Shown: positions 1 to 43,244 of the stretch, piece by piece
Numbering within the stretch: position 1 is the first letter of the stretch
How the letters are laid out: every line of letters begins with the position of its first letter
IMG/VR virus record: IMGVR_UViG_3300022744_000020
Span: 62,001-126,000 of that record
Strand: one strand, 5' to 3'
DNA length: 64,000 bases
The notes under the pieces: model-generated
What the model was told of the DNA's origin: nothing
Database searches by the model: none
Seen by the model: only the letters and a program-made list of their open reading frames with translations
Made by a program: the position numbers and the translations under genes

Positions 1-126
1 GGGATCAGCGAGGCCATGAGTCAGAATCAAGGTGCCAACATGGACGTGAAGGAAGCGGCGCTGTATTCCAAGGCTTCCTACATCGTGGACTTCCTGCTGG
101 ATCAAGTCGAACTCGTGAGCATCTAA
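1..126 (+). CDS. 3' end of a conserved jumbo-phage protein (phiKZ gp177-like by position), partial
   Basis: Frame 1 is open from the window edge (GISEAMSQNQ...LLDQVELVSI*) to TAA at 124-126 and abuts the next ATG. Confidence 0.6.
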   Translation, partial: GISEAMSQNQGANMDVKEAALYSKASYIVDFLLDQVELVSI

Positions 127-849
127 ATGCAATCCACCTCCTACGTCAGAAACCGGCAAGCAGTTCTGGATGATCTGGTTTTGGGGGAGGACTCGCGGAT
201 GATCACCAAGCAAGGTTGCAAAATCCACATACCCACCCGGTATGTGGAGTACAAGCTGGGTCAAATCGGCTTGACCAACCTGATCCTTGGTATCCATGCA
301 ATCATCGTCGGGAATCAGTACGCTGTACGCATCGTGGATGCCATGATGCGGATCCGTCCAACGACCACGACGAAGATCAAGGTGGATGACGAAGATTACT
401 ACGAGTTCGATTTCCCTCCTGGCTCTGTGGTTTACGAGTCGACCGATCTCGTGAAGACGCCAACCCTGGTGTACTTCATTCAGACTCCGTTCTTTACCCG
501 AGGAAAAACTCCTTGGTTCATGAACTATCTGGATCGGGCTGAAATCTTCAGCACTGCTCAAAAGCACGCCGGTGCTGCGATTGGTCTGAACCGGGAAATT
601 CCGGAGTTTCTGGTCTCTCTGACCTCTCGAGACGCCCAGGATCAATCAGTCGAATATCGTCACGCGATCAAGAGCATTGATGACGTCTACCGCCGGCCTG
701 CGATGACAGTCCCGGTTCGTAACGTTTCGACTTCGGCCAGTGGCACCTTCAGCAAGCTTGGAGGCGCCTACATGCGTCAAGGGGTGGTGTCGGCCCTGGT
801 CAAGCCCAGTGAGCGCTCTAGCGACATTGAGACGATTCTGAGACAGTAA
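127..849 (+). CDS. conserved phiKZ gp176-like virion/vRNAP-associated protein
   Basis: 240 aa ORF directly upstream of the prohead protease, matching recalled gp177-176-175 order. Confidence 0.6.
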   Translation: MQSTSYVRNRQAVLDDLVLGEDSRMITKQGCKIHIPTRYVEYKLGQIGLTNLILGIHAIIVGNQYAVRIVDAMMRIRPTTTTKIKVDDEDYYEFDFPPGSVVYESTDLVKTPTLVYFIQTPFFTRGKTPWFMNYLDRAEIFSTAQKHAGAAIGLNREIPEFLVSLTSRDAQDQSVEYRHAIKSIDDVYRRPAMTVPVRNVSTSASGTFSKLGGAYMRQGVVSALVKPSERSSDIETILRQ

Positions 850-863
850 TCCAATCACCGTTC

Positions 864-902
864 ATACGCTACCTGCACGGTAAACCCGTGCAGGTAGCGT
901 AT
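864..902. terminator. 17-bp perfect hairpin without a U-tract
   Basis: atacgctacctgcacgg-taaac-ccgtgcaggtagcgtat. Confidence 0.65.
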
Positions 903-963
903 TGTGATTTTATTTTATAGACTGCGCTCTCTTCGACTCTTTTCTTTTAAGGACCTTTATCAC

Positions 964-1761
964 ATGGTAATAACAAGGCCACTTGGTGCTGCGAAGCCCC
1001 AGAAAACCTTATTCTCTTGCACGGCACTACCGGCAAACAAAGCCGGTATTCTCAAAAAGGACGAGTTCGGTTATTTCGAGATTCCCATCGGGGGATTGAA
1101 TTGCTTTAATTCTGCGGGTCATTGGTACACCGCCGATCAAACTGCTGAGCTGTTCGCTAAGAGCTCCCACCTGAATCGAAGAATCGAAGACGGCAGACTC
1201 TTTGCAGAGGCGGGCCATCCGAAGCGCCTTCCCGGTCAGTCTGAAGACGACTATATCCAGCGCATCCTCACCATTGAGGAATCTATGGTGGCTGGACATT
1301 GGGCCAGCATCCGATTGGACTATGACTCCATCAAGGATGAAAGAGGCCGTCCGGTTGTGGCCATGATCGGCAAGGTCAAAGGTGAGGGGAAATTCGGTCC
1401 GGCACTTGAAAGTAGTTTGCTCAATCCCAAGATCAACACCGCGTTTTCGATTCGGTCTTTCACTGAGGACAGTTTTGTCGCAGGTGTTAGAAACCGAATT
1501 ATCCGTCAGATCATCACGTGGGACTGGGTCATCGAGCCGGGTATCTCGTTTGCGGGCAAATACAACAGCCCGTCTCTGGAGGGTCGCCGACTGGCGGTCG
1601 ATCTGGAGTCTGCTGAAATGACCCGTGAGGTCATTCAGCGAGCCATGCGCAAGCCTGTGTTGGCTGGCATGGAGTCCTGCCGTCTGATGGGCGTGGAGCT
1701 GTTCCAGCAGCTTGGTTGGAACATGGACGTGGGCGATCTTCCAAGTTACGCCAAGTGGTGA
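964..1761 (+). CDS. prohead (head maturation) protease, phiKZ gp175/T4 gp21 family
   Basis: Motifs AEAGHP (His), AFSIRS (Ser), ITWDWVIEPG (Asp) and a C-terminal SLE autocleavage-type site; start moved to ATG 964 behind AAGGA. Confidence 0.9.
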   Translation: MVITRPLGAAKPQKTLFSCTALPANKAGILKKDEFGYFEIPIGGLNCFNSAGHWYTADQTAELFAKSSHLNRRIEDGRLFAEAGHPKRLPGQSEDDYIQRILTIEESMVAGHWASIRLDYDSIKDERGRPVVAMIGKVKGEGKFGPALESSLLNPKINTAFSIRSFTEDSFVAGVRNRIIRQIITWDWVIEPGISFAGKYNSPSLEGRRLAVDLESAEMTREVIQRAMRKPVLAGMESCRLMGVELFQQLGWNMDVGDLPSYAKW

Positions 1762-1780
1762 TGGCCAAAAAATAAACCAG

Positions 1781-1815
1781 AGGTATCTGGCTCCCACAAA
1801 GGGAGCCAGATACCT
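1781..1815. terminator. terminator between convergent genes
   Basis: 15-bp stem aggtatctggctccc/gggagccagatacct; the upstream A-tract gives a U-tract on the minus strand. Confidence 0.75.
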
Positions 1816-1967
1816 TACTTTGATCGTCCGGTGCTTACGCGCTCCCATGGACCAGAGCTGCTTTTGTTGGTGAACCAAATGCAAAATCCGATGACAAGCG
1901 AAGCCACACCAATTAAGACCAGAAGAAGAAAAACCAAATAAATCTCAAGTTCGTTCAATGGCTGCAC
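1815..1967 (-). CDS. 50-aa single-TM membrane protein (absent from the ORF track)
   Basis: GGAG then GTG start; MQPLNELEIYLVFLLLVLIGVASLVIGFCIWFTNKSSSGPWERVSTGRSK*; stop lies at the terminator. Confidence 0.7.
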   Translation of the reverse strand: MQPLNELEIYLVFLLLVLIGVASLVIGFCIWFTNKSSSGPWERVSTGRSK

Positions 1968-2016
1968 AGTCGACTCCAGGTAGAGAAAATAAAGAACTAA
2001 TTCGATACGGTATTAA

Positions 2017-2364
2017 ATGTCTTTATTTTACTGGAGTATGGCAATGGACACTGGGGCGGCATTATCTTTCGACAAGATGATCCAATTCGTGAATAAAATG
2101 ATCCCGATCTTGGATCAGAGCACCAAGTCTTCTGACTACCCTTCTGCCGTTGATTGGCTTTCGGCGTTAGGTCAAAAGAAAAGAAGCCTGGAAACGATTC
2201 GGGCTCTGCTGCAAGAGTTTCGCCTTTACGATGATTTTCCAGGGCTCGATGGAAGATGTCTATCGGAAATCAGCAGAGTCGTCAAGGAATTAGGGATCCT
2301 GAAGAAAATGGAGAATGGAACTCCGTTCTCGGCCTTTGATGTTTCTCTGGCCTTCAAACACTGA
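2017..2364 (+). CDS. hypothetical protein
   Basis: 115 aa ORF followed by a hairpin; true start may be ATG 2044 after GGAG. Confidence 0.6.
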   Translation: MSLFYWSMAMDTGAALSFDKMIQFVNKMIPILDQSTKSSDYPSAVDWLSALGQKKRSLETIRALLQEFRLYDDFPGLDGRCLSEISRVVKELGILKKMENGTPFSAFDVSLAFKH

Positions 2365-2374
2365 AGGAGCTAAC

Positions 2375-2413
2375 CTTACTCCTCCATCGCCGTAAAAGCG
2401 ATGGAGGAGTAAG
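2375..2413 (+). terminator. 16-bp hairpin
   Basis: cttactcctccatcgc...gcgatggaggagtaag. Confidence 0.65.
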
Positions 2414-2436
2414 TAATCTGCAGTTTTTTATGGTCA

Positions 2437-2451
2437 TATATTGTTTTGGTG
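2437..2451 (+). promoter_or_regulatory. early promoter motif
   Basis: TATATTGT-tttgg-TG, a member of the recurrent motif. Confidence 0.6.
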
Positions 2452-2486
2452 AATCTCCACCTAAACTCCTGAGTAAAGGAACTCTC

Positions 2487-2837
2487 ATGACCTGGAACTT
2501 CTTCTCCCTCCTCCTTCGCGCTCTTCATTCGCTGTCGGATTTGATTTGGATGGCCCTGATGTACTTGAGTGACTACGACGCGATCGTGAACGACTATCAC
2601 AATCGCGTCGACCGTCTACACGATCTGATCTGCCACCGGCGGGTAGGTCGCAAGGCCAACGCCCTTCCCGGCTGGTCCGTCCAGAAGGAACTCGAAGAAC
2701 TTGACAGCATCCGTGAGGACCTTCTGCGTGATGCTGCGAAGCTGTATTCGGGACGAGAGGATATGGAGTCGTTTGTGAAGTCTTACGACCTCATGCTGGA
2801 GGCTGTTCGAACCCACCTCACTTGGAGTGCCAAGTGA
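2487..2837 (+). CDS. hypothetical protein with a hydrophobic N-terminus
   Basis: AAAGGA RBS then ATG 2487; lies between a promoter motif and a terminator. Confidence 0.7.
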   Translation: MTWNFFSLLLRALHSLSDLIWMALMYLSDYDAIVNDYHNRVDRLHDLICHRRVGRKANALPGWSVQKELEELDSIREDLLRDAAKLYSGREDMESFVKSYDLMLEAVRTHLTWSAK

Positions 2838-2860
2838 ATCGAGTGACTCGTTGGTGAGAG

Positions 2861-2891
2861 AGAAAAGGGGCTCGTCTCCCCTTTTCTTTTT
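2861..2891 (+). terminator. Rho-independent terminator
   Basis: agaaaagggg-loop-ccccttttct followed by a T run. Confidence 0.7.
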
Positions 2892-2927
2892 ACTAACTAA
2901 AATCCACATTCCAATTATTTTCAGTCA

Positions 2928-2942
2928 CATATAACCAATGTG
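2928..2942 (+). promoter_or_regulatory. early promoter motif
   Basis: CATATAAC-caatg-TG; near-identical to 59425-59439. Confidence 0.7.
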
Positions 2943-3006
2943 AATCGAGTACAAATCGTGTATTCGAGCAACATTTCCCAAACCACTCCTGAGAAAAGGA
3001 TTTGAA

Positions 3007-3111
3007 ATGAAGTCTCTCCTCGTCCACCTCTTCGTCGATCAGTGGGAAAAATGGGTCGGCGCAGTGACCGTCGGCGTCTTCTTCGCTGTTCTCATCGCTC
3101 AAGGAGCTTAA
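3007..3111 (+). CDS. 34-aa hydrophobic micropeptide 1
   Basis: AAGGA RBS; MKSLLVHLFVDQWEKWVGAVTVGVFFAVLIAQGA*. Confidence 0.75.
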   Translation: MKSLLVHLFVDQWEKWVGAVTVGVFFAVLIAQGA

Positions 3112-3113
3112 AA

Positions 3114-3215
3114 ATGAAAGCATTCGACATCACTGTTCAAGCAGCTTGGGTCGTGATTGGCCTGAGTATCGCCGCCAAAGGCGTGCAGATGATCCTGACC
3201 ACTGGCAACAAGTAA
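3114..3215 (+). CDS. 33-aa hydrophobic micropeptide 2
   Basis: AAGGAG RBS; MKAFDITVQAAWVVIGLSIAAKGVQMILTTGNK*. Confidence 0.75.
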   Translation: MKAFDITVQAAWVVIGLSIAAKGVQMILTTGNK

Positions 3216-3225
3216 GGAGCCAAAG

Positions 3226-3324
3226 ATGTTTCGTATTCTCATTGGATGCTTTCTCGTCGCCGTCGGCGCTGGCATCGCTCGTGACGCCCTTGAAGAGATC
3301 GGAGAGCTGATGGAAGACAACTGA
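3226..3324 (+). CDS. 32-aa hydrophobic micropeptide 3
   Basis: TAAGGAG RBS; MFRILIGCFLVAVGAGIARDALEEIGELMEDN*. Confidence 0.75.
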   Translation: MFRILIGCFLVAVGAGIARDALEEIGELMEDN

Positions 3325-3386
3325 CACCCATCTTCCTCTCTTCAACACCCTTCTCTCTTTTCCTACCACACTCCCGGAGCAACACC

Positions 3387-3689
3387 ATGACCCAAGCTGA
3401 AACCAACGCCCAAGCCACCAACGAAACCAACAACGGCACCCCTCCCTTCAACGAAGAACAAGCAAACGCTGCCTATGAGGAAGCCACGCGCAAGACGCGC
3501 GAAGCCGAGGAGAAGGCTGCCGCTGAAGAGGCGGCACGCATCCGCAAGAACCTCCTGATCGCAGCCGGCAGCTTCGCTGCTGGTGCTGCCTCGGCCGTGG
3601 GCGTCGCCTACGCCTGCTGGAAGTTCTTCGGAAGCAAGAGCGGTGACGCTCCTGCCACTGCTGCTCCGACCGACGTCCCGTCGGCTTGA
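3387..3689 (+). CDS. small protein with a charged helix and a C-terminal membrane segment
   Basis: GGAG RBS; EEAARIRK then LLIAAGSFAAGAASAVGVAYACW; biased codons. Confidence 0.8.
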   Translation: MTQAETNAQATNETNNGTPPFNEEQANAAYEEATRKTREAEEKAAAEEAARIRKNLLIAAGSFAAGAASAVGVAYACWKFFGSKSGDAPATAAPTDVPSA

Positions 3690-3694
3690 GCCAT

Positions 3695-3742
3695 GAGCCC
3701 TACGGGGCTCACCAAGAACGGTAACCCCGTTCTTTTTTATTT
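3695..3742 (+). terminator. tandem hairpins ending in a U-tract
   Basis: tgagccc-tacg-gggctca, then aagaacgg-taacc-ccgttctt-ttttatt. Confidence 0.7.
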
Positions 3743-3777
3743 GTTCTGACTATTTTGTAGCTAAACCCCTACCCCAG

Positions 3778-4281
3778 GTGCCTGACTTTATGTTTGTCAA
3801 CATCCCACTCGCCAGAGTCACTTCTCCTTCTTCTACTCCTGAAGAAGCACCTCTAGTCAACATCACTGGAGTTATCTACGACAAAGGAAACAGATCTGTT
3901 GGGTGTAAGCTATCCTTCCCACCAATGAAGGACTATCGCAATCAATCCAAAGAATCTTCTCTGGGGGAGATTACCTCAGAGCAAGCAAGTAGGATGATCG
4001 AAAGAGGGCAAGCATTTGTCGAGATGCATCCACCGACCGATGATCGAATCTGCCGTATGGTCACCATTGATGATCGCAATGTTGCTGGTACGATGGAGAA
4101 TTTCAATTTAGAAGGAGACGTACTTATCGGAGATTTCCGACCATTGAACAAGAAAGTCTGCGATTTATTTTCATCCGGCCAAGTAAGTTTTGGCATCCGC
4201 TCTTACCGTGACGAGGACAACAAACCCGTCATTGTTACCTGGGACCTTGTCCCTTCTTCCACCCAACCCAACGAGGCTTAA
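3778..4281 (+). CDS. prohead-protease paralog, probably catalytically altered
   Basis: Blocks collinear with 964..1761: FVEMHPP, RMVTIDDRNVAG, SFGIRSY, IVTWDLV; start uncertain. Confidence 0.7.
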   Translation: MPDFMFVNIPLARVTSPSSTPEEAPLVNITGVIYDKGNRSVGCKLSFPPMKDYRNQSKESSLGEITSEQASRMIERGQAFVEMHPPTDDRICRMVTIDDRNVAGTMENFNLEGDVLIGDFRPLNKKVCDLFSSGQVSFGIRSYRDEDNKPVIVTWDLVPSSTQPNEA

Positions 4282-4284
4282 GCC

Positions 4285-4905
4285 ATGACCCAAGATCAAA
4301 TCACCCAAGACCAAGCCACTCCCGTCACGACTGACGAGGCTGCGTCCACGAATCAAAGCAACCCCATGGAGCCGGTCTACGATCGCTACAACCGCACGAT
4401 CCTGACGAACGTCAATCTGCGCCTGCCCTATGTGGATGTTGTGCTCAAGGACAAAGAAAACCCTGTCTTCCACTGCTTCCGACTGAACACGGGTCTGATC
4501 AATTCGGTTCACAAGGACCGTGAACTGCCGGAAAAGTTCCTTACGGACGCCTCCAATCCGTCGGTCGTGATGTCGGAGTACGTTTTCAATGAATCGAACA
4601 TCCTGGAGATCCTCGAGCTGGAACTGGTGGAGGGGGTTCTCGCGCCTACCGTGTATCAAGGAACGCAAGAAGTGGATCCCACTTCGGAGCTTTACGGTGC
4701 AACCCGTCCGACCTATCCCAAGAAGGACGAAGACACATTCGGTCTGAGCCTGCTGGTCCAGATCACGATCGATCAATCCACGGGCGTGCTGGGTAGCTAC
4801 ATCGATCATTTCGAGGTCAACTCGAATCGCTGGACAGTTGCTGAAGATCGCTACCAAAATCTCCAGCCGATCCAAGTGCGAATCGACTTCAGTGCCAAGC
4901 GCTGA
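4285..4905 (+). CDS. hypothetical acidic protein
   Basis: 206 aa, GAGG RBS, 3 nt after the upstream stop. Confidence 0.75.
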   Translation: MTQDQITQDQATPVTTDEAASTNQSNPMEPVYDRYNRTILTNVNLRLPYVDVVLKDKENPVFHCFRLNTGLINSVHKDRELPEKFLTDASNPSVVMSEYVFNESNILEILELELVEGVLAPTVYQGTQEVDPTSELYGATRPTYPKKDEDTFGLSLLVQITIDQSTGVLGSYIDHFEVNSNRWTVAEDRYQNLQPIQVRIDFSAKR

Positions 4906-4920
4906 TTTCTGAAGACAGCA

Positions 4921-4964
4921 TACGCCCCCCACCATCCCGATTTCTCGGGATGGTGGGGGGCGTA
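4921..4964. terminator. 20-bp perfect hairpin between convergent genes
   Basis: tacgccccccaccatcccga-tttc-tcgggatggtggggggcgta. Confidence 0.75.
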
Positions 4965-4969
4965 CCTAT

Positions 4970-5914
4970 TTATTTGTACTTCTTCTTCGCTCGGTTCAAT
5001 GCATTGACTGCCTTGCTGAAGGTGTATTGATTCGACGACGAGACATTGATCAGCACCTTGTCCGAATTGCCGAAATGAACCGTCACGGATCCAAGACCTT
5101 CGACAACAGCCTCGATTTCACGGACGCGCTCCGCGGGAATGACAAAACCCACGTGGCGTCCGAGGGGATAGACCATAGCCACGTCTGCTGGCGTCTCAGG
5201 GGTAGCGTCTCCGAGAGGGGCTTGTGCGGCGTCGGAAGAGGGATTATCGTGGATGATGGGCATGGCCTTACCTTTGTCTTGGGTTTCTTTGAAAAATGCC
5301 GTCAGTGTGGAAAAACTTTCAGGCGTGACTTCGAAGCCAACTTGGCCTCCGAATACTGGCTGAGTGGTGGGCTCAGGAGTTTCTTGGACTTCTCTCCACT
5401 CAGTGGTGGTGTGTATTGGACCAGCAGAGGTCCAGGTCAAGGGGATGTCGACAAACTGTGGGTCGACGATAACTTCGCTTACCTCTTTGTTCGGCGCTAT
5501 GGGGAACTTCACCACGGCGGCACTTGGAGGTTCTTTGGAGTCTGACCATTCCCAGTCGATGCTGGGTATCTGATAAAACCAAATACCCTCGTTGACTACC
5601 CCACATTGGAGATGATGCTTCTTCATCAACTTTGCGTAATGACCGACGAAAAAGTTTTTCAGCGGCACAGTAAAGTTGATCTCTAACGGAAAGCTACTGC
5701 CGTCCTTCGGTAAACGAATCGAGAAACTTTGGAGACTCATCCGAAAGTGGCAATGATGGCTCCAGAACTCTTGAACGATTTCGTACTCAGGAGAGCCAGG
5801 TTTGAGAATCGAGTCAAGCATACCATCTTGGAGGGCTTGACTGACCGGTATTTCTTTAGTGCCTGTTTTTCGGATTGCGTTGAAAAGGAATCGGGTCATG
5901 GACATAGTGAGCAT
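4970..5914 (-). CDS. hypothetical multi-domain protein with a Pro/Thr-rich linker
   Basis: 314 aa ORF ending at the hairpin. Confidence 0.75.
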   Translation of the reverse strand: MLTMSMTRFLFNAIRKTGTKEIPVSQALQDGMLDSILKPGSPEYEIVQEFWSHHCHFRMSLQSFSIRLPKDGSSFPLEINFTVPLKNFFVGHYAKLMKKHHLQCGVVNEGIWFYQIPSIDWEWSDSKEPPSAAVVKFPIAPNKEVSEVIVDPQFVDIPLTWTSAGPIHTTTEWREVQETPEPTTQPVFGGQVGFEVTPESFSTLTAFFKETQDKGKAMPIIHDNPSSDAAQAPLGDATPETPADVAMVYPLGRHVGFVIPAERVREIEAVVEGLGSVTVHFGNSDKVLINVSSSNQYTFSKAVNALNRAKKKYK

Positions 5915-5982
5915 CGCTTTCTTGAAAGACCACGTGTCCTAAGACACTAGATAATTTATTTAACTGCATTTTTTTAAAAACA

Positions 5983-5997
5983 CATATTACTTTTTAG
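5983..5997 (+). promoter_or_regulatory. early promoter motif
   Basis: CATATTAC-ttttt-AG after an AT-rich tract. Confidence 0.6.
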
Positions 5998-6027
5998 AAT
6001 AGTCCATTTAACCGACGGAGAACACTC

Positions 6028-6714
6028 ATGGCCGACCGCCTCAATCTCAAGAAACCCCTCATCACCCCGAAGATGCTCGTCAATACCTACGAAGCCGTTT
6101 ATTCGGGAGGGGTTAAATACCCCCGTGAAGGAACGCAAGCCATCAGTCTAATCCGTCAGCTCTATGAGCTGTACGTTGGAGTGGTCGAGGTGAGGAATCA
6201 CGAAATTGGAGGGGTGAAGATGAGTACCATCGAAATCCCGATTTCCAAAGCTGCGGGACACTCCAAGCCGTACCTGGAGATGCTAGTTCTCAATATGCAG
6301 CAGTCGGCAAAATGCCCGTTTTTAATTGTTAGCGACGCTGAGATGGTTTGCTTGTCTTGGCACCACACTGATTTCGAAGACGCTTCTCTGTTCCTCTCCA
6401 AGCAACTCAAACGTTTGGATTATGCCAGAGGCATTACCCAGGGAAATCGCCTTTTGATGGACGACCCCCGCGTGCAGGAAAGCGCGGAAAGAATCATTCG
6501 AGTGATCGGCTTCCCGGAAACAATTAAGATATGCTCGAGCAGTTTACTGACAGGCATCTTAATCGTTGAGTTCACCCTCTCACCGGTCAAGAACGTGCAG
6601 CGCAGTGAGTACATGCGCACTAAGGTGCGAGATGCCTTCGATGGCCACTGCAGAGATTTCAGTATTCGGAAGACTCCAGGACTCCCTTCTTTCCGCGTGG
6701 CAATTCATCTCTGA
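6028..6714 (+). CDS. hypothetical protein
   Basis: GGAG RBS, 228 aa; terminator-like hairpin with cttcgg loop and T run at about 6728-6752. Confidence 0.8.
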   Translation: MADRLNLKKPLITPKMLVNTYEAVYSGGVKYPREGTQAISLIRQLYELYVGVVEVRNHEIGGVKMSTIEIPISKAAGHSKPYLEMLVLNMQQSAKCPFLIVSDAEMVCLSWHHTDFEDASLFLSKQLKRLDYARGITQGNRLLMDDPRVQESAERIIRVIGFPETIKICSSSLLTGILIVEFTLSPVKNVQRSEYMRTKVRDAFDGHCRDFSIRKTPGLPSFRVAIHL

Positions 6715-6867
6715 GTCAGAGATGGCGGGGGGCTTCGGCCCTCTATTTTTTGTTGATTCAAAAACTCTAAAAACATACATTATCGATGTAACCAACAGCT
6801 TAAAAAACGAAAACACTGAGGTATTGTTTAATAGAGTATTCCCCACTCGATTCCTGCGGGAGAAATA

Positions 6868-7161
6868 ATGGCATTAACCCATGTCGTTGTTTTGCCTCCG
6901 GATCCATCGAAAGCATGTGAGGATGAACTTGTAGCGCAACTGGCTCGTGTAGAAAGTCTTGCAAAGGACTTGCTGTTAACCGCCGGAAATCTAAAACAGA
7001 TGGGGAATCTAGGTCATCCTCAAGACGCATGCTATCACGCAGGTCGTGTTAGAAGTATGGCCGATATGATCGCTATGCTCTCGACGCAACTGAAAATGAT
7101 GGACCCTACACAACAACACAAGTTTTTGGAAATAACGCTGTCACCAGAGATCCCGAAATAA
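6868..7161 (+). CDS. hypothetical helical protein
   Basis: GGGAG RBS; TACATTAT motif at 6776. Confidence 0.7.
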   Translation: MALTHVVVLPPDPSKACEDELVAQLARVESLAKDLLLTAGNLKQMGNLGHPQDACYHAGRVRSMADMIAMLSTQLKMMDPTQQHKFLEITLSPEIPK

Positions 7162-7223
7162 TTTTTAATCCCCCCAAGCGCATCTTATGCGTTACCCCCA
7201 CATCAACCGTCAAAGGACGTTCC

Positions 7224-7820
7224 ATGTCTCTGAGTCTCCACAAAACCCGCTCGATGCTGAGCATGATCGGCACCTGGGCTGCGCTGACCCCCGTCGTCAC
7301 CGGCCTGAGCAACACGCTGAAACTGACCCTGCCGAATGGCATCCCGATGGAAGTGACCGTGCTGCGTGCCGGTGACGTCACCAAGACCACCGTGTTCTCC
7401 TTCTCCAAGAAGGACATGACTGGCGACCACCTGCTCAGCCTGCGCAAGATCCCGGAAAACAGCCCCGCAGGGATCTATGAGACGGAAGATCGCGTCTACC
7501 TGGCCGCCGAAACCAACAACCTGGAACTCAGCCAAGCGGTTCTGGAAATGCTGATTCGCCTGCCGGCGACGGTTCACGGAACCGCGATGGCCCTGAGCGA
7601 CGGCCAAGTGGTCGAGATCGCCGACTGGAAGCGCGTGAACAGCGACGCTGGCGAGATCAACTTCCGCATGGACCTGGTTCGTGCCGTCAGCGTTCAGGAC
7701 ACGCTCCTGACCGTGATCTGCGAAGGTGGCATCAATCTGTCGCTGACCATGGCGCGGAAGGTGGACGCTCTGGCTGAAGCCAAGAAGATCCGTGCCGCGC
7801 TGCCGCTGACGATGCGCTGA
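7224..7820 (+). CDS. hypothetical protein, probably highly expressed
   Basis: AAAGGA RBS, strongly C/G-ending codons, 15-bp hairpin at 7850-7884. Confidence 0.8.
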   Translation: MSLSLHKTRSMLSMIGTWAALTPVVTGLSNTLKLTLPNGIPMEVTVLRAGDVTKTTVFSFSKKDMTGDHLLSLRKIPENSPAGIYETEDRVYLAAETNNLELSQAVLEMLIRLPATVHGTAMALSDGQVVEIADWKRVNSDAGEINFRMDLVRAVSVQDTLLTVICEGGINLSLTMARKVDALAEAKKIRAALPLTMR

Positions 7821-7916
7821 TTCACGATCGCGTCTGGCGATCAACCACCAATCGGGCGTTAGGGTTTTGCCCTAACGCCCGATTATTCTCACGATTTCGT
7901 ATCTAGGAGCCCTTCC

Positions 7917-8372
7917 GTGGCAACTGTTCCCCAACCCGCAGCGATCCGAAGCACCTACGAGGTCGTTACCAAGTACGGCAAAATGGTGTCAGAACCGACG
8001 GCTCCTGTGTTCGTCGGACTCAACGACATGCTCAAAGGAGCTGTTGGTAACTACGTCACCGCGGCAAGCTCCAACCAGTCGGAAGTTCTGCTGATCGTCA
8101 GCGCTGGGACCCATCCGGTTCCTGGCGCCATCGCTCAGTCGAATCAGACTCAACTGCCCTGGCAATCGATCTGTATCGACATCACAGGCATGCGACCGCA
8201 CACCTACGAAACCCCTGGCGCTTCTAGGCTCAGCGAAATGAAACTACTGCGCAATGGCCGGGAATGGCTGTGCTACTTCTGGCATCCGAAGATGACCGCT
8301 GAAGACACCTCGGGCGTTTACGCCATGCTCAAGGAACACGTGCGTCAAGCCCCGATTCGTCGGTTCTCCTGA
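7917..8372 (+). CDS. hypothetical protein
   Basis: AGGAG RBS with GTG start; hairpin at about 8380-8419. Confidence 0.75.
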   Translation: MATVPQPAAIRSTYEVVTKYGKMVSEPTAPVFVGLNDMLKGAVGNYVTAASSNQSEVLLIVSAGTHPVPGAIAQSNQTQLPWQSICIDITGMRPHTYETPGASRLSEMKLLRNGREWLCYFWHPKMTAEDTSGVYAMLKEHVRQAPIRRFS

Positions 8373-11763: not shown

Positions 11764-13878
11764 TTAGCTGGCGACGTAATCCGACATGCGGAAAGCACCC
11801 AGGTTCAGCGTCTGAACGGTCTTGGCCACGTTGCCGTAGAAGTTGATCGACAGCGTCCACGAGTAGCCGCGCATCGAGTCAGCCGAGGTCACGCGGCAGA
11901 CCGGTTCGATGCGGTACAGACCCGCGAAGCGACCCACGGTCCGCTTCTCGACTTCGGCGTTGATCACGTCCTCGAGCTGGCGCTCGGTGTAGCGGATCGA
12001 ACCGGTGAACGAACGCTGAATGGCGTCGCCGACCTTCTGCAGGGTGGTCTGCAGGCAAGCCGAGAAGTAGTTGTTGAGGATCGACGTGTCGTTGTCGTAC
12101 ACCGTCTGCAGGGCCGGGAAGTAGTTCACCGAGCGCGAGAACGCCGACACCCAGTTCATGCCGTTGTCCCAGTCTTGGTTGCGAACCGAAGCCGGGGTGA
12201 ACAGCACGTTGATGTCCGTGAACATCTTGATCTGGTTGTTCGGCGAGCGATCGAAGATCTTGCCTTCGTTCCAGATGCCGTCCGAAGCGCCCATCATCTC
12301 GGCGCTCATGCGTGCCAGCTCGATCGACAGCGGCAGCTTGTGGCGATACTGCGAGGAGACCATACGGCCCGAACGCGGCATCAGCAGGCCACGCGAAGTC
12401 TGGGTTCCGTAGAACTCCGACTCCGGGAAGTTGCGCAGGCGGTTGCGCAGCATCAGACCCAGCGAACGCTCTTCAGCGGCCGTCAGGTCCGGGCCACCAA
12501 CGACGTGCGTGACCACGATCGGCAGGAGATCCTTGCGGATCGCCAGCACTTGGCACATGTCCTTCTTCGCATTGATACCGAAGCCGGTATCGTAGAAGTG
12601 GCTTTCCACATTGACCGCGTTCTCTTGAACCGGATCGTTCGGATCGGCGTAGCGGCGCAGTTGTTCGCCCACCAGCGCGTCGAACTTGGCCAGCGACATC
12701 TCGCCATCAGCACCGCCGGCGGCGTAGTGCGTGGTCTGATCCGACATCAGGACCGATTCAGCCGACGAAGTGTCCACTTGGTAGGACAGGTACTCAGCAC
12801 CACCAGCGTTTTGACCGCTGACGAAGTTGAAGAACCATTTCTCGTCGCTGTCGCCGACCAGGTCGGTACCGACTGCACCACCAGCAGCTTCGATCGCAGC
12901 GCGCTCCGCGGCATAGAAGCGATCGACCAGGTCTTCGATCACTTCCGAGTAGACCTTCAGGCCACCGAAGTCGCCATAGATCTTCGAGAAGCGCGGATCG
13001 TCGACTTGCTGGTAGCGGTCGATGAAGGTGTCCGACAGCGAGAAGTTCGCGTCGGTGTTGGGGTTGATCACGCCTTCACGGAACGAGAATTCGACGAAGG
13101 GCTCGGCAAACTTCGTTTGCACGATGGTGCCGGTGGTCTTCTCGTTCGGACGACGGATGACCGCCATACGGAACGGGTAGGCGCGGACGGCTTCCATCAC
13201 CTTCTTGTTCATCGGGGACGTACCGGTTTCGGTCGGAGCCCACAGACGAATGCCACTGTTGTTGTAGACCTTGCCGTAGCTGGAGGCCCACAGTTGAGCG
13301 ATCGGATACAGTCGCGACTGCTTGGTGCCGTCCGCGCTCGTCAGCGTGCCAGCCAGTTCCGCCAGAGCGCCGAACGAAGATTCGTCGGCATAAGCGGTTT
13401 TGCGCTTGATGACCCAGCGAACCTTGAAGCCGGGGACGAATGCGGCCGGCGTTGCCAGTTGCGGCTCGTTCAGCTCATCACGCAGGATTTCGCCGGCAGT
13501 GGTACGCTTGTAGACCGGGATCTGCTCTTCGAGCACTTCCAGATACAGCGCCAGGTTGGCACGCGGGCCCAGGCCGTGTTCGGGCTTGGGGAACACACGT
13601 TGGATCATGTGCGAGTTCGCTGCCTCCATCAGAACGTTCGACAGAACCGTCTGGTGGGTAGCGTACGCACTGCGCTCGTCGAAGGTCGTGCTGCCGAAGA
13701 TGGCTTCGCGCGTCTTGCTGTTGACCAGCACTTCGTGCATCGGACCCTTCTCGGCGTAGATGTACACCTTCGGAAGGTGTTGCGGGTAATTTTCCGGCTC
13801 AACGACCGGGACACGGAAAGACTTATCTTCCGTACCCAGCGCATAGGACATTGGCGCGGCGTTGACAATGGAACTCAT
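11764..13878 (-). CDS. contractile tail sheath protein (phiKZ gp29-like)
   Basis: 704 aa; N-terminal NAAP...PQHLP...AEKGP and internal YDTGF resemble phiKZ-type sheaths; GAGG RBS. Confidence 0.9.
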   Translation of the reverse strand: MSSIVNAAPMSYALGTEDKSFRVPVVEPENYPQHLPKVYIYAEKGPMHEVLVNSKTREAIFGSTTFDERSAYATHQTVLSNVLMEAANSHMIQRVFPKPEHGLGPRANLALYLEVLEEQIPVYKRTTAGEILRDELNEPQLATPAAFVPGFKVRWVIKRKTAYADESSFGALAELAGTLTSADGTKQSRLYPIAQLWASSYGKVYNNSGIRLWAPTETGTSPMNKKVMEAVRAYPFRMAVIRRPNEKTTGTIVQTKFAEPFVEFSFREGVINPNTDANFSLSDTFIDRYQQVDDPRFSKIYGDFGGLKVYSEVIEDLVDRFYAAERAAIEAAGGAVGTDLVGDSDEKWFFNFVSGQNAGGAEYLSYQVDTSSAESVLMSDQTTHYAAGGADGEMSLAKFDALVGEQLRRYADPNDPVQENAVNVESHFYDTGFGINAKKDMCQVLAIRKDLLPIVVTHVVGGPDLTAAEERSLGLMLRNRLRNFPESEFYGTQTSRGLLMPRSGRMVSSQYRHKLPLSIELARMSAEMMGASDGIWNEGKIFDRSPNNQIKMFTDINVLFTPASVRNQDWDNGMNWVSAFSRSVNYFPALQTVYDNDTSILNNYFSACLQTTLQKVGDAIQRSFTGSIRYTERQLEDVINAEVEKRTVGRFAGLYRIEPVCRVTSADSMRGYSWTLSINFYGNVAKTVQTLNLGAFRMSDYVAS

Positions 13879-14083
13879 GTCGAATCCTCGTGGAGAAAAA
13901 AGAAAATGATCAACTATTCCGACGCTTTTTGATCGCCGGTAGGCTCGAAACCTTAAACATAATAACTTCTATCCATAAAAAGTTATCACGCTCAGATTAT
14001 AAGGTGGCTCCGTTTCGACGGAAAACAACACACCAGATAAGAAAATTCAGTCCAGAGGGACTGAATGTACTTTATTTTGATGC

Positions 14084-39632: not shown

Positions 39633-41576
39633 ATGGCTATCAATTCCCCTTCGTTCGCCGGAATCCCTGGTGTCACCGATACCGCGATCGACATGTCGGC
39701 CCCGACCCAAACGGGTGCGGCAAATCCCTTCCCGTCCAGCACGAGCGCTGGCGGCTTTCGAGCCCGCGGCGGCCTGTCCAGCCTGGCTTCGATGGGTCCC
39801 TCGATCTTCCGCAACAGCGGCGACGACGTCACCAATGCGTTCGTCACGCACATGCGTGAAGCGGTCAAGACCACCGACCGTGCTGGTTGGCAGACCCGCG
39901 TGATCCCGATCACGCGTGCTGATCAACCCGACATCGCCTGGAGCGGCATCGCCATCGCAGTGCGCGCCGGCGAACAACCGGACGTGGCCGTGTTCGTGCT
40001 GATCATCGGTGGCAGCGAAGCCGGCCCGGCACCGCGGAGCATTCCGTTCCAAGGTCAGACCTGGCAGATCAAGTACACGCCGGGAGACGCCTGGGATGCG
40101 TCGTACGTCCAAGCCGTCAGCCAACACCTGCAGCGCACGCTGAGTGCAGCCTTCGGCGGCGTGCCGCTGAACGATCCGATCCTGGTCGGCGCGATGGCGG
40201 TTCCGCAGGAAGTTTCGACGGCGGACGTGGACCGGATCAACCAGATCTTGAGCAGCGCGCAGTACGCGGCCGCCCACGCACTGGTCCCGACCGAGCTGGA
40301 AATCGAACCCGGCGATCGCCTGACGTTCGCTCCGCGGTACCGTTGCCCCGAGCTGACCAACGTGGTTGGCATGCCTGTGCTGGCTCCGATCTGTGTGGAC
40401 ACGTCCACCGGCAGCGGTCGTCAGTCCCAGGACCAGACGACGATCAACCGTCAGACGGGCAACCGTCGTCTGGGTGGTGCGGGCGCCTACCTGCAAGCCA
40501 CCTACGTCGGTCGCATCCAGCAGCCGGGCAACTACGGCTTCGCTCCCCAGGTCAACAACCGCGTGTTCGCACCGGAGTTCGTGATCACTGCGGTGGAAAG
40601 CATGGGCGCGGCAACGATGCCGCTGCTGCTGCTGAATGCCTGTGGTTTCCTGAGCGTGTCGTCGAACCTGGCGTGGATGGAAGGCTTCCGACCGGATCCG
40701 AACATCCCTCCGGGCAACGTCGACCATCGTGACGTGGGCATCCTGGGACGAGTGGCCGGCTACGAAGCCGCCAGCAATGGTGGTCGTGGTCAGCGCGCGC
40801 AACTCAAGGGCGCAGGCGTGCAAGATCAGCACATCGGCGAGTTCCTGGAACGCATCTTCCACGACCGTCCGATGATCTCGGTTCGCGTCGAAGAAGCTGG
40901 CCCGATGACCTGGGCACTGGCTCCACTGGTGGAAATCGCATGTGGTGGCCCGGCTGCGGCTGAAGCCAACTCCATGCTGATCCAGCAACTGAACCAGTTC
41001 TGCCGCGGCAAGCTGATGGCTCGTCTGGCCAACGCTGGCGACCAGAACATGCCGATCATGATCGAGAACTGCCCGCGCGTTCACCTGGGGTACTACGTGT
41101 CCTCGGACGGCGTGCGTCACGATCTGGCCAACATCGGTCTGATCGCACTGGCCAACGCCAGTGGCTCCGATGGCTCGCCGACGCTGGTCGAAGCTGACTG
41201 GGTGCGCACGTTCGATCCGCAGTCCGCTCCGGAAGAAGTGCGTCTGCAACAGCGCCTGTCGCTGATCGAGCTGGCCACCCACGGCGTCCAAGTCACGGGC
41301 TACGCACGGGTGCCGACGTTCAACGGTGCGTTCCTCAAGTGCTTCACTGAAGCACTGGTCGACGCCGGCCTGTCGATGCAAGTCGCGGGCAACCAGTCGC
41401 GCATGCGTGCCCAGGAAATGTACGCTCCGGGCTTCTACGCAGCCGCAGCCGTCGGTTCGGTGAACTTCTACACCGCAGCCGATGCCAATGGCCAACACTC
41501 GGGCGCCGGCCGTGCGTTCTTCAACACGGGCTTCAACACCGGGATCGGCCAAGGTCACCCGACCGGCTTCCACTGA
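39633..41576 (+). CDS. chmA: chimallin, phage nucleus shell protein (phiKZ gp54-like)
   Basis: 647 aa, strong codon bias, low-complexity termini, PEFVIT, RVHLGYY and VTGYAR blocks; lies between the gp52-like gene and nvRNAP beta'. Confidence 0.85.
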   Translation: MAINSPSFAGIPGVTDTAIDMSAPTQTGAANPFPSSTSAGGFRARGGLSSLASMGPSIFRNSGDDVTNAFVTHMREAVKTTDRAGWQTRVIPITRADQPDIAWSGIAIAVRAGEQPDVAVFVLIIGGSEAGPAPRSIPFQGQTWQIKYTPGDAWDASYVQAVSQHLQRTLSAAFGGVPLNDPILVGAMAVPQEVSTADVDRINQILSSAQYAAAHALVPTELEIEPGDRLTFAPRYRCPELTNVVGMPVLAPICVDTSTGSGRQSQDQTTINRQTGNRRLGGAGAYLQATYVGRIQQPGNYGFAPQVNNRVFAPEFVITAVESMGAATMPLLLLNACGFLSVSSNLAWMEGFRPDPNIPPGNVDHRDVGILGRVAGYEAASNGGRGQRAQLKGAGVQDQHIGEFLERIFHDRPMISVRVEEAGPMTWALAPLVEIACGGPAAAEANSMLIQQLNQFCRGKLMARLANAGDQNMPIMIENCPRVHLGYYVSSDGVRHDLANIGLIALANASGSDGSPTLVEADWVRTFDPQSAPEEVRLQQRLSLIELATHGVQVTGYARVPTFNGAFLKCFTEALVDAGLSMQVAGNQSRMRAQEMYAPGFYAAAAVGSVNFYTAADANGQHSGAGRAFFNTGFNTGIGQGHPTGFH

Positions 41577-41617
41577 TTGACAACCGCCGGGCTTGCTCGG
41601 CGTAGTCAATGAAAACA

Positions 41618-41664
41618 TTTAAGGCGGCTGGGGAAACCCGGCTGCCTTAAATTTATTTTCTTTT
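41618..41664 (+). terminator. terminator after chimallin
   Basis: tttaaggcggctggg-gaaa-cccggctgccttaaa followed by a T-rich run. Confidence 0.75.
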
Positions 41665-41735
41665 ACTATAATTCTACAAGTGAGGGACATTGACTGTAAT
41701 CGCTTCGCTTTTCCCCGTGTAGCTGGAGACCTTTA

Positions 41736-43244
41736 ATGGGAAGTTTCTTAAGACTGATAGACAATGCAGACGCCTTTGCGGAGGTTCCTAATCCGATCTT
41801 CGTCAACGACGTGGGGCGAGCAAGTCGTGAAAAGAGAGCTCAGCTTGAAAAAGCCCTGACGACTGAAGTGACCGGGGTCTTCACGGAGATGCCGCCGTCT
41901 TGCGATTGCGAGCAGACAACGGACTACTCCAATCTGGGACTGATCTGTACCAACTGCAACACCCCGGTTATTCGCAGCGCAGATCGAGACCTGAGGTCAA
42001 TGGTGTGGATCCGTCGTCCTGGAGGCGTCTCCAAGCTGATGAACCCGATGTTCTTGAACATGCTCCTCAAGCTGTTCAAGAAGAAGAACTTCAACTACAT
42101 CTACTACTTGCTGGACTCATCGTACCGTCCAAACTGCAAGACTCCCAACGATGTGGATGAGTTGGCCGCCAAAGGAATCAAAAGAGGATACAACTACTTC
42201 GTCGACAATCTGGAGTTCGTGATCACTGCCTTGTTTGACATGAAGACCTTCCGGCAAAAAGGAAGGGATCGAAAGTCACTCATGCGACTGATCAAGATCA
42301 AGAGGGACAAGATCCTTCTTGAGCAGCTACCGCTGATCAACAAATCACTGTCTGTCGTTGAGAAAACAGAAAGCGACTCCTATGTGGATCCGACGGTCAT
42401 CATGATGATCGACGCGATTCGCACGATACAGGGGATCGACACGACGGAGAGAGTGCTCGGTAACCATGCCAAGCAGCAAAGAACAGCCAAGACGCTGATC
42501 ATGCTGACCGAAGCGTACGACGAAATGCGCTACGGCATCATCTTGACGAAGAAGGGGATTGTTCGCAAGAACCTCTGCGGTACAAGAACGGCTTTCTCCA
42601 TGCGGTTTGTGATCTCATCCATCACTTGGCCGCATGACTACGAGGGAATTGAAATCCCTTGGGCTGGTGCGCTGATGATGTTCTTCCTTCACTTGGTGTC
42701 GAAATTGGCCAAGAGGGGACTGTCAAACAACGAGTGCATCCGACGCATCGAGCTCGCTCGGTACAAATTTGACCAGGAACTCTATGATCTGCTGATTGAA
42801 ATCTGCGGTGAGTTTCCGGTGATTTGGGATGAAGACGACGACGAAGAAACCAAAGCCAAAATCGGCGGCCGTCCCTGGACAACGATCGGGCGCTTCCCGA
42901 CACTCAAGCGTGGCTCGATCCAAGCCATGCCGATCCTGAAGATCAAGAAGGACCCGTACGACCAAACCATCGGGATCTCACCCCTCTGCATCAAGGAGCC
43001 GAATGCCGACTTCGACGGCGACCAAGAAGTCGTGGTGCTTCAGCTTGATGAAGTGTCTATGCGCGCTATCCGTCCAATGCGTGCACACCTCACGCTTCCG
43101 AGCACCAATGGCCATCGACAACTGGGTCAGGCCATGTCTTTCACCAAGCCCGTCGTGGTGACGGTGAACAACTGGATCGAATGGGAAGATCTTGATGAAC
43201 CTCTCACCCAACAGCAGATCCATTACCTGGAAGGATTGAGTTGA
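41736..43244 (+). CDS. non-virion RNAP beta' N-terminal/catalytic subunit (phiKZ gp55-56.1-like)
   Basis: Zinc-binding CDC...CTNC, RFPTL and catalytic NADFDGD. Confidence 0.92.
   Translation: MGSFLRLIDNADAFAEVPNPIFVNDVGRASREKRAQLEKALTTEVTGVFTEMPPSCDCEQTTDYSNLGLICTNCNTPVIRSADRDLRSMVWIRRPGGVSKLMNPMFLNMLLKLFKKKNFNYIYYLLDSSYRPNCKTPNDVDELAAKGIKRGYNYFVDNLEFVITALFDMKTFRQKGRDRKSLMRLIKIKRDKILLEQLPLINKSLSVVEKTESDSYVDPTVIMMIDAIRTIQGIDTTERVLGNHAKQQRTAKTLIMLTEAYDEMRYGIILTKKGIVRKNLCGTRTAFSMRFVISSITWPHDYEGIEIPWAGALMMFFLHLVSKLAKRGLSNNECIRRIELARYKFDQELYDLLIEICGEFPVIWDEDDDEETKAKIGGRPWTTIGRFPTLKRGSIQAMPILKIKKDPYDQTIGISPLCIKEPNADFDGDQEVVVLQLDEVSMRAIRPMRAHLTLPSTNGHRQLGQAMSFTKPVVVTVNNWIEWEDLDEPLTQQQIHYLEGLS

What the first reader, a model, noticed from the sequence alone, without database searches (positions are those of the whole stretch)
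3778..4281. Second prohead-protease copy with the nucleophile Ser apparently replaced by Gly
Seen: four collinear blocks match the protease 2 kb upstream (RRIEDGRLFAEAGHP/RMIERGQAFVEMHPP, RILTIEESMVAG/RMVTIDDRNVAG, AFSIRSF/SFGIRSY, IITWDWV/IVTWDLV). His and Asp are kept, FSIRS becomes FGIRS, and the SLE-containing tail is absent. Known: T4 gp21/phiKZ gp175 proteases use His and Ser. Inference: a pseudo-protease that could regulate maturation by hetero-oligomerising, or act as a decoy for defences that sense phage proteases.
Basis: partly seen in the sequence, partly recalled or inferred. Interest (0 to 1): 0.65.

Follow-up and report, generated by a model that had tools for sequence, protein, structure and literature searches.

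The report
Dead, shortened copy of prohead protease
A 270-kb jumbo phage carries, 2 kb downstream of its capsid-maturation protease, a shortened and almost certainly inactive copy of that enzyme; such copies were first described in giant phages in 2017, so this is a divergent new member of a known family whose function is still unknown.

Summary
Window 3790-4281 (+) encodes a 163-aa protein; the real start is the ATG at 3790, not the GTG at 3778. It is a true homologue of the Peptidase_S80 prohead protease at 964-1761: BLASTP E 2e-6, profile-profile 94%, and an AlphaFold model whose best solved match is T4 gp21 (Z 8.5).

- **Nucleophile:** the Ser is invariant in 120/120 S80 proteases and is Gly135 here. 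It is also Gly in three close relatives and in the one distant relative found.
- **His:** it is kept only approximately, one residue out of register.
- **Asp and tail:** the Asp is kept. The C-terminal propeptide with the SxE self-cleavage site is absent.
- **The 'IRS' serine:** it is Ala in 23/120 active-type proteases, including the biochemically tested SPN3US gp245, so it is not the nucleophile.

This is not a new kind of gene. The protein is closer to the truncated 'cryptic protease' paralogues of giant phages (SPN3US gp117, 201phi2-1 gp206; phrog_7478; Ali et al. 2017) than to its own neighbouring protease.

The gene is intact and under purifying selection (dN/dS about 0.35), but it evolves about 30 times faster than the protease. 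Its function is unknown. The hetero-oligomer and decoy ideas remain untested; the complex prediction gave no answer. Interest is modest.

The parts
3790..4281 (+). Gene for the 163-aa truncated, nucleophile-less paralogue of the prohead protease (P0003). The folded core is about residues 55-158; the N-terminal 54 residues are modelled with low confidence.
   Evidence: ATG start supported.
4192..4194 (+). Codon GGC = Gly135, in the column of the invariant S80 nucleophile Ser.
   Evidence: The same GGC codon is found in L008, L009 and P0010.
4027..4029 (+). Codon CAT = His80, one residue N-terminal of the catalytic-His column (E-M-H-P against E-x-G-H-P).
4243..4245 (+). Codon GAC = Asp152, in the column of the invariant S80 Asp. 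It is also kept in all eight gp117-type paralogues examined, so it is likely structural.
3714..3734 (+). Terminator-like hairpin plus T-run that closes the upstream gene and marks the start of the transcription unit.
   Evidence: Conserved in relatives.
3751..3760 (+). TATTTTGTAG, a candidate phage promoter element 30 nt before the start codon. The same 10-mer class lies upstream of the protease gene (911-920) and of a virion structural gene elsewhere in the genome.
   Evidence: Only three exact copies in 270 kb, and the pattern was defined after seeing two of them.
3775..3779 (+). Shine-Dalgarno-like AGGTG (AGGAG in the three relatives), 10 nt before the ATG at 3790.
4285..4905 (+). Downstream 206-aa ORF that begins 3 nt after the stop and is probably co-transcribed. 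No family match. dN/dS 0.11 against L008.
4921..4964 (.). Strong 20-bp-stem terminator-like hairpin that closes the two-gene unit.
964..1761 (+). Full-length Peptidase_S80 prohead protease (P0011, 265 aa). Triad His85/Ser162/Asp187. Carries the C-terminal propeptide with the SPSLE site.

Best explanation
The gene encodes a catalytically dead, shortened paralogue of the phage's S80 (phiKZ gp175 / T4 gp21-type) prohead serine protease. It belongs to the same broad family as the 'cryptic protease' paralogues of giant phages (SPN3US gp117, 201phi2-1 gp206, phrog_7478).

Shown here:
- It keeps the core beta-rich gp21/assemblin-like fold and several structural residues (Glu78, Phe134, Arg137, Asp152).
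- It has Gly where the nucleophile Ser should be.
- Its catalytic His is displaced by one residue.
- It has lost three internal loops and the whole C-terminal propeptide. In the real protease that propeptide carries the self-cleavage site and is thought to target the enzyme into the prohead.
- It is an intact gene maintained by purifying selection.

Inferred, not shown:
- It acts by binding rather than cutting during head morphogenesis. Possible partners are the protease itself or the S/A/G-x-E-bearing propeptides of head proteins.
- It acts outside the prohead core, because it lacks the targeting tail.
- It is transcribed with the downstream 206-aa gene from a promoter type shared with the protease gene.
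For: Homology:
- BLASTP E 2e-6.
- hhalign against S80: 94%, E 1.2e-7.
- phrog_7478 E 1.1e-7.
- hhalign against eight gp117-type paralogues: 97.9%, E 6e-13, score 79.6 against 52.4 for S80.
- An HMM built only from those eight paralogues scores the protein 25 bits, against 4 bits for the S80 HMM.

Fold:
- AlphaFold model with pLDDT 80-90 over residues 55-158.
- Best solved match T4 gp21 5JBL, Z 8.5, rmsd 4.2 A, 121 residues aligned; the next best is 4.8.
- Best viral matches are short (124-160 aa) uncharacterised jumbo-phage proteins, including 201phi2-1 gp206.

Loss of catalysis:
- The Ser column is 120/120 Ser in S80 and Gly here, in P0004, in P0005 and in P0010.
- S153A abolishes SPN3US gp245 self-processing (PMC7411985).

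Maintained gene:
- No stops or frameshifts in three lineages at dS 0.18-0.22.
- dN/dS 0.33-0.44, fewer non-synonymous changes than neutral expectation (p 0.002-0.005).
- The upstream intergenic region is 98% conserved against 89-92% for the coding DNA.

Not a recent duplicate:
- In the tree the protein falls with the gp117-type paralogues (branch support 79/79).
- Its neighbouring protease groups with other proteases (97/94).

Prior description of such paralogues: PMC5694885, section 17.
Against: The structural model was built from an alignment made mostly of S80 proteases, so its fold is partly imposed. A 43-row alignment gave a useless model (pLDDT 39).

The grouping with gp117-type paralogues joins long branches and has only moderate support.

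dN/dS is about 30 times that of the protease (0.35 against 0.01). Constraint is therefore weak and a dispensable gene is not excluded.

The complex prediction with the protease gave no answer.

The promoter-motif argument rests on three sites.
Confidence: 0.6

Rival explanations
1. It is a decaying, functionless duplicate of a protease gene that has not yet been lost.
For: Its protein evolves about 30 times faster than the protease (dN/dS 0.35 against 0.01). The family is tiny: three near relatives and one distant relative among 1.8 billion cluster representatives. The nearest cultured relatives (RP12, FLC9) show no detectable copy.
Against: The frame is intact in three lineages. dN/dS is significantly below 1. 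The regulatory region is strongly conserved. The same Gly-for-Ser state, with His, Arg and Asp kept, is found in a relative only 36% identical. Analogous short paralogues persist in many jumbo phages, some in two or three copies.
Confidence: 0.13
2. It is an anti-defence protein: a protease look-alike that titrates or blinds a host immune sensor.
For: It evolves relatively fast compared with neighbouring structural genes. The only distant homologue (P0010) lies two genes from an Acb2/Tad1-like anti-defence gene.
Against: There is no match to any known anti-defence family. Substitutions among relatives are mostly conservative. The gene sits in a head-gene neighbourhood and shares a candidate promoter motif with the protease. 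I found no report of a defence system that senses S80 proteases, though I ran no literature search aimed at one.
Confidence: 0.1
3. It is still an active protease that uses another nucleophile, either Ser133 (two residues before Gly135 on the same strand) or Ser138.
For: His80, Arg137 and Asp152 are present. Ser133 and Ser138 are conserved among the three close relatives.
Against: The distant relative has Glu and Ala at those two positions. The Ser138 column is Ala in 23/120 true proteases. The His is out of register, a second conserved His is lost, and three loops around the active-site region are deleted. Arg and Asp are also kept in gp117-type paralogues that lack both His and Ser, so they look structural.
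Confidence: 0.05
4. The similarity to the protease is chance, and the ORF is unrelated.
For: Pfam PF20034 itself does not match. Pairwise identity is only 26%.
Against: Four independent lines agree on the same collinear alignment: BLASTP, hhalign, two PHROG profiles and a fold match to T4 gp21.
Confidence: 0.01

Closest known systems
Truncated 'cryptic protease' paralogues of giant phages: SPN3US gp117, 201phi2-1 gp206 (and a second copy), PhiPA3 gp143, Erwinia phage Stratton gp135 / Kwan gp144 (phrog_7478; Ali et al. 2017, PMC5694885)
   Same: - Short (125-165 aa) homologue of the S80 protease, ending just after the Asp strand.
- Same shortened loops.
- Co-exists with a full-length protease in the same genome.
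- One or more catalytic residues lost. Two Erwinia-phage members also have Gly at the Ser column.
- Asp and the Ser+2 Arg are kept.
- Function unknown.
- Profile matches.
   Different: - Very divergent: 25 bits to the family HMM and no BLAST match in 50,697 phage records.
- Keeps a His next to the catalytic-His column, where most gp117-type members have none.
- Lies only 2 kb from the protease gene, whereas gp117 and gp206 lie 50-120 kb away from theirs.
- Has an extra N-terminal stretch of about 54 residues that is modelled with low confidence.
Peptidase family S80 (phiKZ gp175, SPN3US gp245; Pfam PF20034)
   Same: Homologous core fold. Shared motifs: R-x-I-E-x-G, E-x-(x)-H-P, V-A-G, F-x-I-R-S and T-W-D-x-V.
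   Different: - No Pfam match.
- Ser replaced by Gly.
- His shifted by one residue.
- The second conserved His replaced by Thr.
- Three internal deletions.
- No C-terminal propeptide or autocleavage site.
T4 gp21 prohead protease (S77; PDB 5JBL) and herpesvirus assemblins
   Same: Best structural match of the model: Z 8.5 for gp21 and 4-4.8 for herpesvirus proteases.
   Different: 14% identity or less. No catalytic Ser. Smaller domain.

Membership tests
Peptidase S80 (active prohead protease) | Match to Pfam PF20034 above the gathering score | tested here: not met
   No hit at E <= 1. An S80 HMM built here scores 4 bits.
Peptidase S80 (active prohead protease) | Nucleophile Ser (Ser162 of P0011, Ser153 of SPN3US gp245) | tested here: not met
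   Gly135 in that column, against Ser in 120/120 S80 proteases.
Peptidase S80 (active prohead protease) | Catalytic His in the E-x-G-H-P motif | tested here: inconclusive
   Pro81 fills the column and His80 is one residue earlier (E-M-H-P). The distant relative has the exact spacing.
Peptidase S80 (active prohead protease) | Third triad residue Asp in T-W/F-D-x-V | tested here: met
   Asp152.
Peptidase S80 (active prohead protease) | C-terminal propeptide with an S/A/G-x-E self-cleavage site | tested here: not met
   The protein ends 11 residues after the Asp.
Peptidase S80 (active prohead protease) | gp21/assemblin-like fold | tested here: met
   Model against 5JBL: Z 8.5, rmsd 4.2 A, 121 aligned. 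The model depends on an S80-rich alignment.
gp117-type truncated protease paralogues (phrog_7478) | Significant profile match to the family | tested here: met
   phrog_7478 E 1.1e-7. hhalign 97.9%, E 6e-13. Family HMM 25 bits. The true proteases also score about 1e-7 to 1e-13 on phrog_7478, so that match alone does not separate the two groups.
gp117-type truncated protease paralogues (phrog_7478) | Short protein truncated after the Asp strand, with shortened loops | tested here: met
   163 aa. The gap pattern fits the paralogues, not S80.
gp117-type truncated protease paralogues (phrog_7478) | Co-occurs with a full-length S80 protease in the same genome | tested here: met
   One S80 gene and one paralogue in the 270-kb genome.
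gp117-type truncated protease paralogues (phrog_7478) | Common descent with gp117 rather than independent truncation | tested here: inconclusive
   The tree puts it with the paralogues at support 79/79, but long branches meet there.
gp117-type truncated protease paralogues (phrog_7478) | Lack of proteolytic activity | not testable with these tools
   Inferred from residues only. Activity has not been measured for any member, to my knowledge.

The most novel reading that the evidence does not exclude
The short protease look-alikes of jumbo phages, this one included, are regulators of capsid maturation. They pair with the real protease or with its S/A/G-x-E substrates to time or restrain cleavage. 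A membrane-anchored version (P0010) would then act at the inner-membrane site where proheads assemble.
Probability: 0.2. Interest if true: 0.6.

Novelty: new member of a known kind. Interest (0 to 1): 0.3.

Why it matters
Pseudo-enzymes that regulate their active paralogues are well known in cells but hardly explored in phages.

Short dead copies of the prohead protease recur in many jumbo phages. Some genomes carry two copies (201phi2-1), and three short Phabio proteins are among the BFVD matches. None has a known role. This copy adds a very divergent lineage in which the Ser-to-Gly change is stable while His, Arg and Asp persist. It also adds a distant relative fused to two hydrophobic, probably membrane-spanning, segments.

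That helps define which residues of the family are structural and which are dispensable. It also gives extra candidates for the experiment that matters, which is best done in SPN3US or 201phi2-1 where genetics exist.

The finding does not change what is known about capsid maturation.

Tried and rejected
- **Phage record searches.** Megablast of window 1-8000 and tblastn of the protein against 50,697 phage records found no match. tblastn of P0010 also found nothing.
- **Word-index protein search.** With the protein alone and then with the four-row profile, it returned only the three close relatives and P0010.
- **Full representative search.** It added only P0010. The hits at E 5e-23 to 3e-5 are cadherin, fibronectin-III and bacterial Ig repeat proteins plus one protein with no confident family match. 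Their scores add up over many weak repeat matches, so I rejected them as spurious.
- **IMG/VR pattern scan.** Nothing found.
- **Positional counterparts.** I looked in Ralstonia phage RP12, Burkholderia phage FLC9 and the contig of protease P0016. Similar-sized ORFs downstream of their proteases match neither the paralogue HMMs nor S80.
- **Downstream 206-aa ORF.** I tested whether it is the detached protease tail, as was suggested for SPN3US gp118. It has no similarity to S80, to any Pfam or PHROG family, or to neighbours of other paralogues.
- **First AlphaFold run.** The 43-row alignment gave pLDDT 39 and was discarded.
- **S80 profile against PDB sequences.** No meaningful hit.
- **Complex prediction.** Protease residues 1-215 with paralogue residues 55-163 returned 'no answer' (ipSAE 0.00). 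This is evidence neither for nor against binding.
- **Thomas & Black 2013** (gp175 mutagenesis) is not held in the library.
- **S/T-x-E motifs.** Motifs occur near residues 53-60, at the border of the low-confidence N-terminal part. I considered them possible protease sites, but they are too frequent by chance and not positionally conserved, so I make no claim.

Full report
**Where the window lies.** The window is bases 62001-126000 of a 270,383-bp IMG/VR virus record judged 98% complete. It is a jumbo phage. Its Peptidase_S80 protease is 44-47% identical to those of Ralstonia phages RP12, RP31 and FLC1-1B and of Burkholderia phage FLC9. The flanking genes (RNA-polymerase beta subunit, virion structural protein phrog_2926, protease) are in the same order as in those phages.

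**The observation.** The ORF listed at 3778-4281 really begins at the ATG at 3790.
- Gene callers give 163 aa (P0003).
- In three related metagenomic contigs the GTG at 3778 reads GAG, and an AGGAG box lies 9-10 nt before the ATG.

The upstream ORF at 964-1761 (P0011, 265 aa) is a full Peptidase_S80 (PF20034 E 1.2e-67; phrog_3014 E 1.2e-67). The similarity between the two proteins is real:
- BLASTP gives E 2e-6 over 123 columns.
- phrog_7478 ('head maturation protease', a 147-position profile) gives E 1.1e-7.
- Protein-language-model neighbours include S80 and S77 clusters, a lead only.

**Catalytic residues.** In an alignment of 120 S80 proteases, His, Ser and Asp are each invariant (120/120). 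They are His85, Ser162 and Asp187 of P0011. These columns correspond to H77, S153 and D178 of SPN3US gp245, which I checked on the sequence. Those residues were aligned to the T4 gp21 triad in PMC5694885. An S153A mutant no longer self-processes (PMC7411985).

| S80 column | S80 proteases | This protein | Distant relative P0010 |
|---|---|---|---|
| Nucleophile Ser | Ser 120/120 | Gly135 | Gly |
| Catalytic His | His 120/120 | Pro81, with His80 one residue earlier | His, exact E-Y-Q-H-P spacing |
| Asp | Asp 120/120 | Asp152 | Asp |
| Second conserved His | His 117/120 | Thr101 | His |
| 'IRS' serine | Ser 96, Ala 23, Gly 1 | Ser138 | Ala |

The His shift is a one-residue deletion (E-M-H-P against E-x-G-H-P). 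It is therefore not the nucleophile. The protein stops 11 residues after the Asp and lacks the EPGIS...SPALES segment and the C-terminal propeptide.

**Fold.**
- A first AlphaFold run on 43 rows failed (pLDDT 39).
- With 124 rows, residues 55-158 reach pLDDT about 80-90, and the first 54 residues stay below 50.
- The best solved match is T4 gp21 (5JBL): Foldseek probability 1.0 and E 2e-3; VIA-align Z 8.5, rmsd 4.2 A, 121 residues aligned. It stands well above the next rows, which are herpesvirus proteases and MCE domains at Z 4-4.8.
- The alignment was mostly S80 sequences, so the model is not independent of the homology inference.
- In the viral library the best matches are short uncharacterised jumbo-phage proteins of 124-160 aa, followed by full-length proteases. 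They include three Phabio proteins, 201phi2-1 gp206 and its second copy, and proteins of fHe-Yen9-04, Eowyn, Psa21 and RAY.

**What family it belongs to.** Ali et al. 2017 (PMC5694885, section 17) described diverged, truncated paralogues of the prohead protease. Examples are SPN3US gp117, Erwinia phage proteins, 201phi2-1 gp206 and PhiPA3 gp143. The authors called them presumably inactive 'cryptic' proteases. phrog_7478 is that family: SPN3US gp117 scores E 9e-49 and 201phi2-1 has two copies, while phiKZ, RP12 and FLC9 have only the true protease.

I took eight such paralogues from phage records.
- Their profile matches the query family better than S80 does (hhalign 97.9%, E 6e-13, score 79.6 against 52.4), with far fewer gaps.
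- An HMM of the eight alone scores the query 25 bits, against 4 bits for the S80 HMM.
- In a maximum-likelihood tree the query family and the gp117-type proteins lie on one side of a branch against 22 proteases (support 79/79). The neighbouring protease groups with another protease (97/94). Long branches meet here, so this is consistent with old common descent but is not proof.
- Among the eight known paralogues the Ser column is Ser (four), Gly (two), Val or Lys. The His column is His in only one. Asp is kept in all eight, and the Arg two residues after the Ser column in seven.

A Gly at the nucleophile position is therefore already present in the known family. The retained Asp and Arg look structural rather than catalytic.

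**How rare this lineage is.** Two word-index searches and one exhaustive search of 1.8 billion cluster representatives found only two close clusters (85-87% identical, JGI metagenomes) and one distant protein, P0010. P0010 has 259 aa. Its last 70 residues are 36% identical to the query, and it matches phrog_7478 on its own (E 1.4e-3). Its N-terminal 65 residues hold two long hydrophobic stretches, judged by eye and not run through a predictor. It lies in another phage contig two genes from an Acb2/Tad1-like gene.

**Is the gene alive?** The frame is intact in three lineages.

| Gene (window against L008) | dN/dS |
|---|---|
| S80 protease | 0.01 |
| Adjacent virion structural protein (240 aa) | 0.02 |
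| Downstream 206-aa ORF | 0.11 |
| Upstream 100-aa ORF | 0.30 |
| This pseudo-protease | 0.35 |

- Across the three pairs, dN/dS for this gene is 0.33-0.44 at dS 0.18-0.22. There are fewer non-synonymous changes than neutral expectation (binomial p 0.002-0.005).
- The 110 bases upstream are 98% conserved, against 89-92% for the coding DNA.
- The gene is therefore maintained, but under much weaker constraint than the enzyme.

**Context.**
- A terminator-like hairpin (3714-3734) precedes the gene, and a 20-bp-stem hairpin (4921-4964) follows the next ORF. That ORF starts 3 nt after the stop. The two genes look like one transcription unit.
- The 10-mer TATTTTRTAG occurs exactly three times in the 270-kb genome. 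Each copy is on the + strand and ends about 30-45 nt before a start codon. The three genes are a virion structural gene (phrog_2163), the protease gene and this gene.
- I defined the pattern from two of those sites, so this is only a hint of co-regulation with head genes.
- The order 'protease ... 100-aa ORF, 163-aa ORF, about 200-aa ORF' is kept in contig L008.

**Mechanism.**
- *Shown:* homology, loss of the nucleophile, truncation, and selective maintenance.
- *Inferred:* the protein no longer cuts. Without the propeptide, which in SPN3US gp245 is thought to target the enzyme into the prohead core (PMC7411985), it probably works outside the core by binding the protease or the S/A/G-x-E propeptides of head proteins. 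gp117 is absent from the virion-protein tables of PMC5694885 that are held as text, which fits a non-virion role.
- *Not tested:* the hetero-oligomer test gave no answer, and no read data could be obtained.
- *Rivals:* a dispensable decaying copy, an anti-defence decoy, and residual activity through another serine. They are weighed in their own sections.

**Verdict.** 'Pseudo-protease' is supported. The thing is a divergent new member of a family described in 2017 whose function remains open. Interest is modest.

Noticed in passing
window 911-920 and 3751-3760; genome C1:15016-15025: TATTTTRTAG occurs exactly three times in the 270-kb genome. Each copy follows a T-rich terminator tail and ends about 30-45 nt before the start of a structural-type gene: a virion protein, the protease and the pseudo-protease. 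It is a candidate phage-specific promoter element.
   Followed up: partly
window 3387-3689 (+): A 100-aa ORF just upstream has an acidic, Ala/Glu-rich N-terminal half and one C-terminal hydrophobic helix. It is only 64% identical to its counterpart in L008, with dS 0.83, far more diverged than its neighbours (dS 0.2-0.3). This suggests a hypervariable or recombined gene.
   Followed up: partly
L011:8001-8780 (P0010): The only distant relative of the pseudo-protease carries two N-terminal hydrophobic segments fused to the protease-like domain. It lies two genes downstream of an Acb2/Tad1-hairpin gene, near thymidylate synthase and DNA ligase genes, in a 42-kb phage contig.
   Followed up: partly
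BFVD hits A0A1Y0SU01, A0A1Y0SW74, A0A1Y0SYY0 (Pseudomonas phage Phabio); L019 and L021 (201phi2-1): Some jumbo phages carry two or three short protease-like paralogues. 201phi2-1 has two copies 1.5 kb apart, and three short Phabio proteins are among the fold matches.
   Followed up: no
window 1761-3790: The 2 kb between the protease and the pseudo-protease holds only small ORFs with no family match (115, 135 and 57 aa). This stretch differs in gene content from RP12 and FLC9, and partly from L008.
   Followed up: partly
window 12001-14000 and 40001-42000: Two 2-kb stretches have clearly higher G+C (0.586 and 0.615) than the window average of about 0.51.
   Followed up: no
S80 alignment, column of His112 of P0011: A second His (V-C/A-x-H motif) is conserved in 117 of 120 S80 proteases, although it is not one of the three residues named as the triad in the literature I read. 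It is Thr in the pseudo-protease and lost in most gp117-type paralogues.
   Followed up: partly
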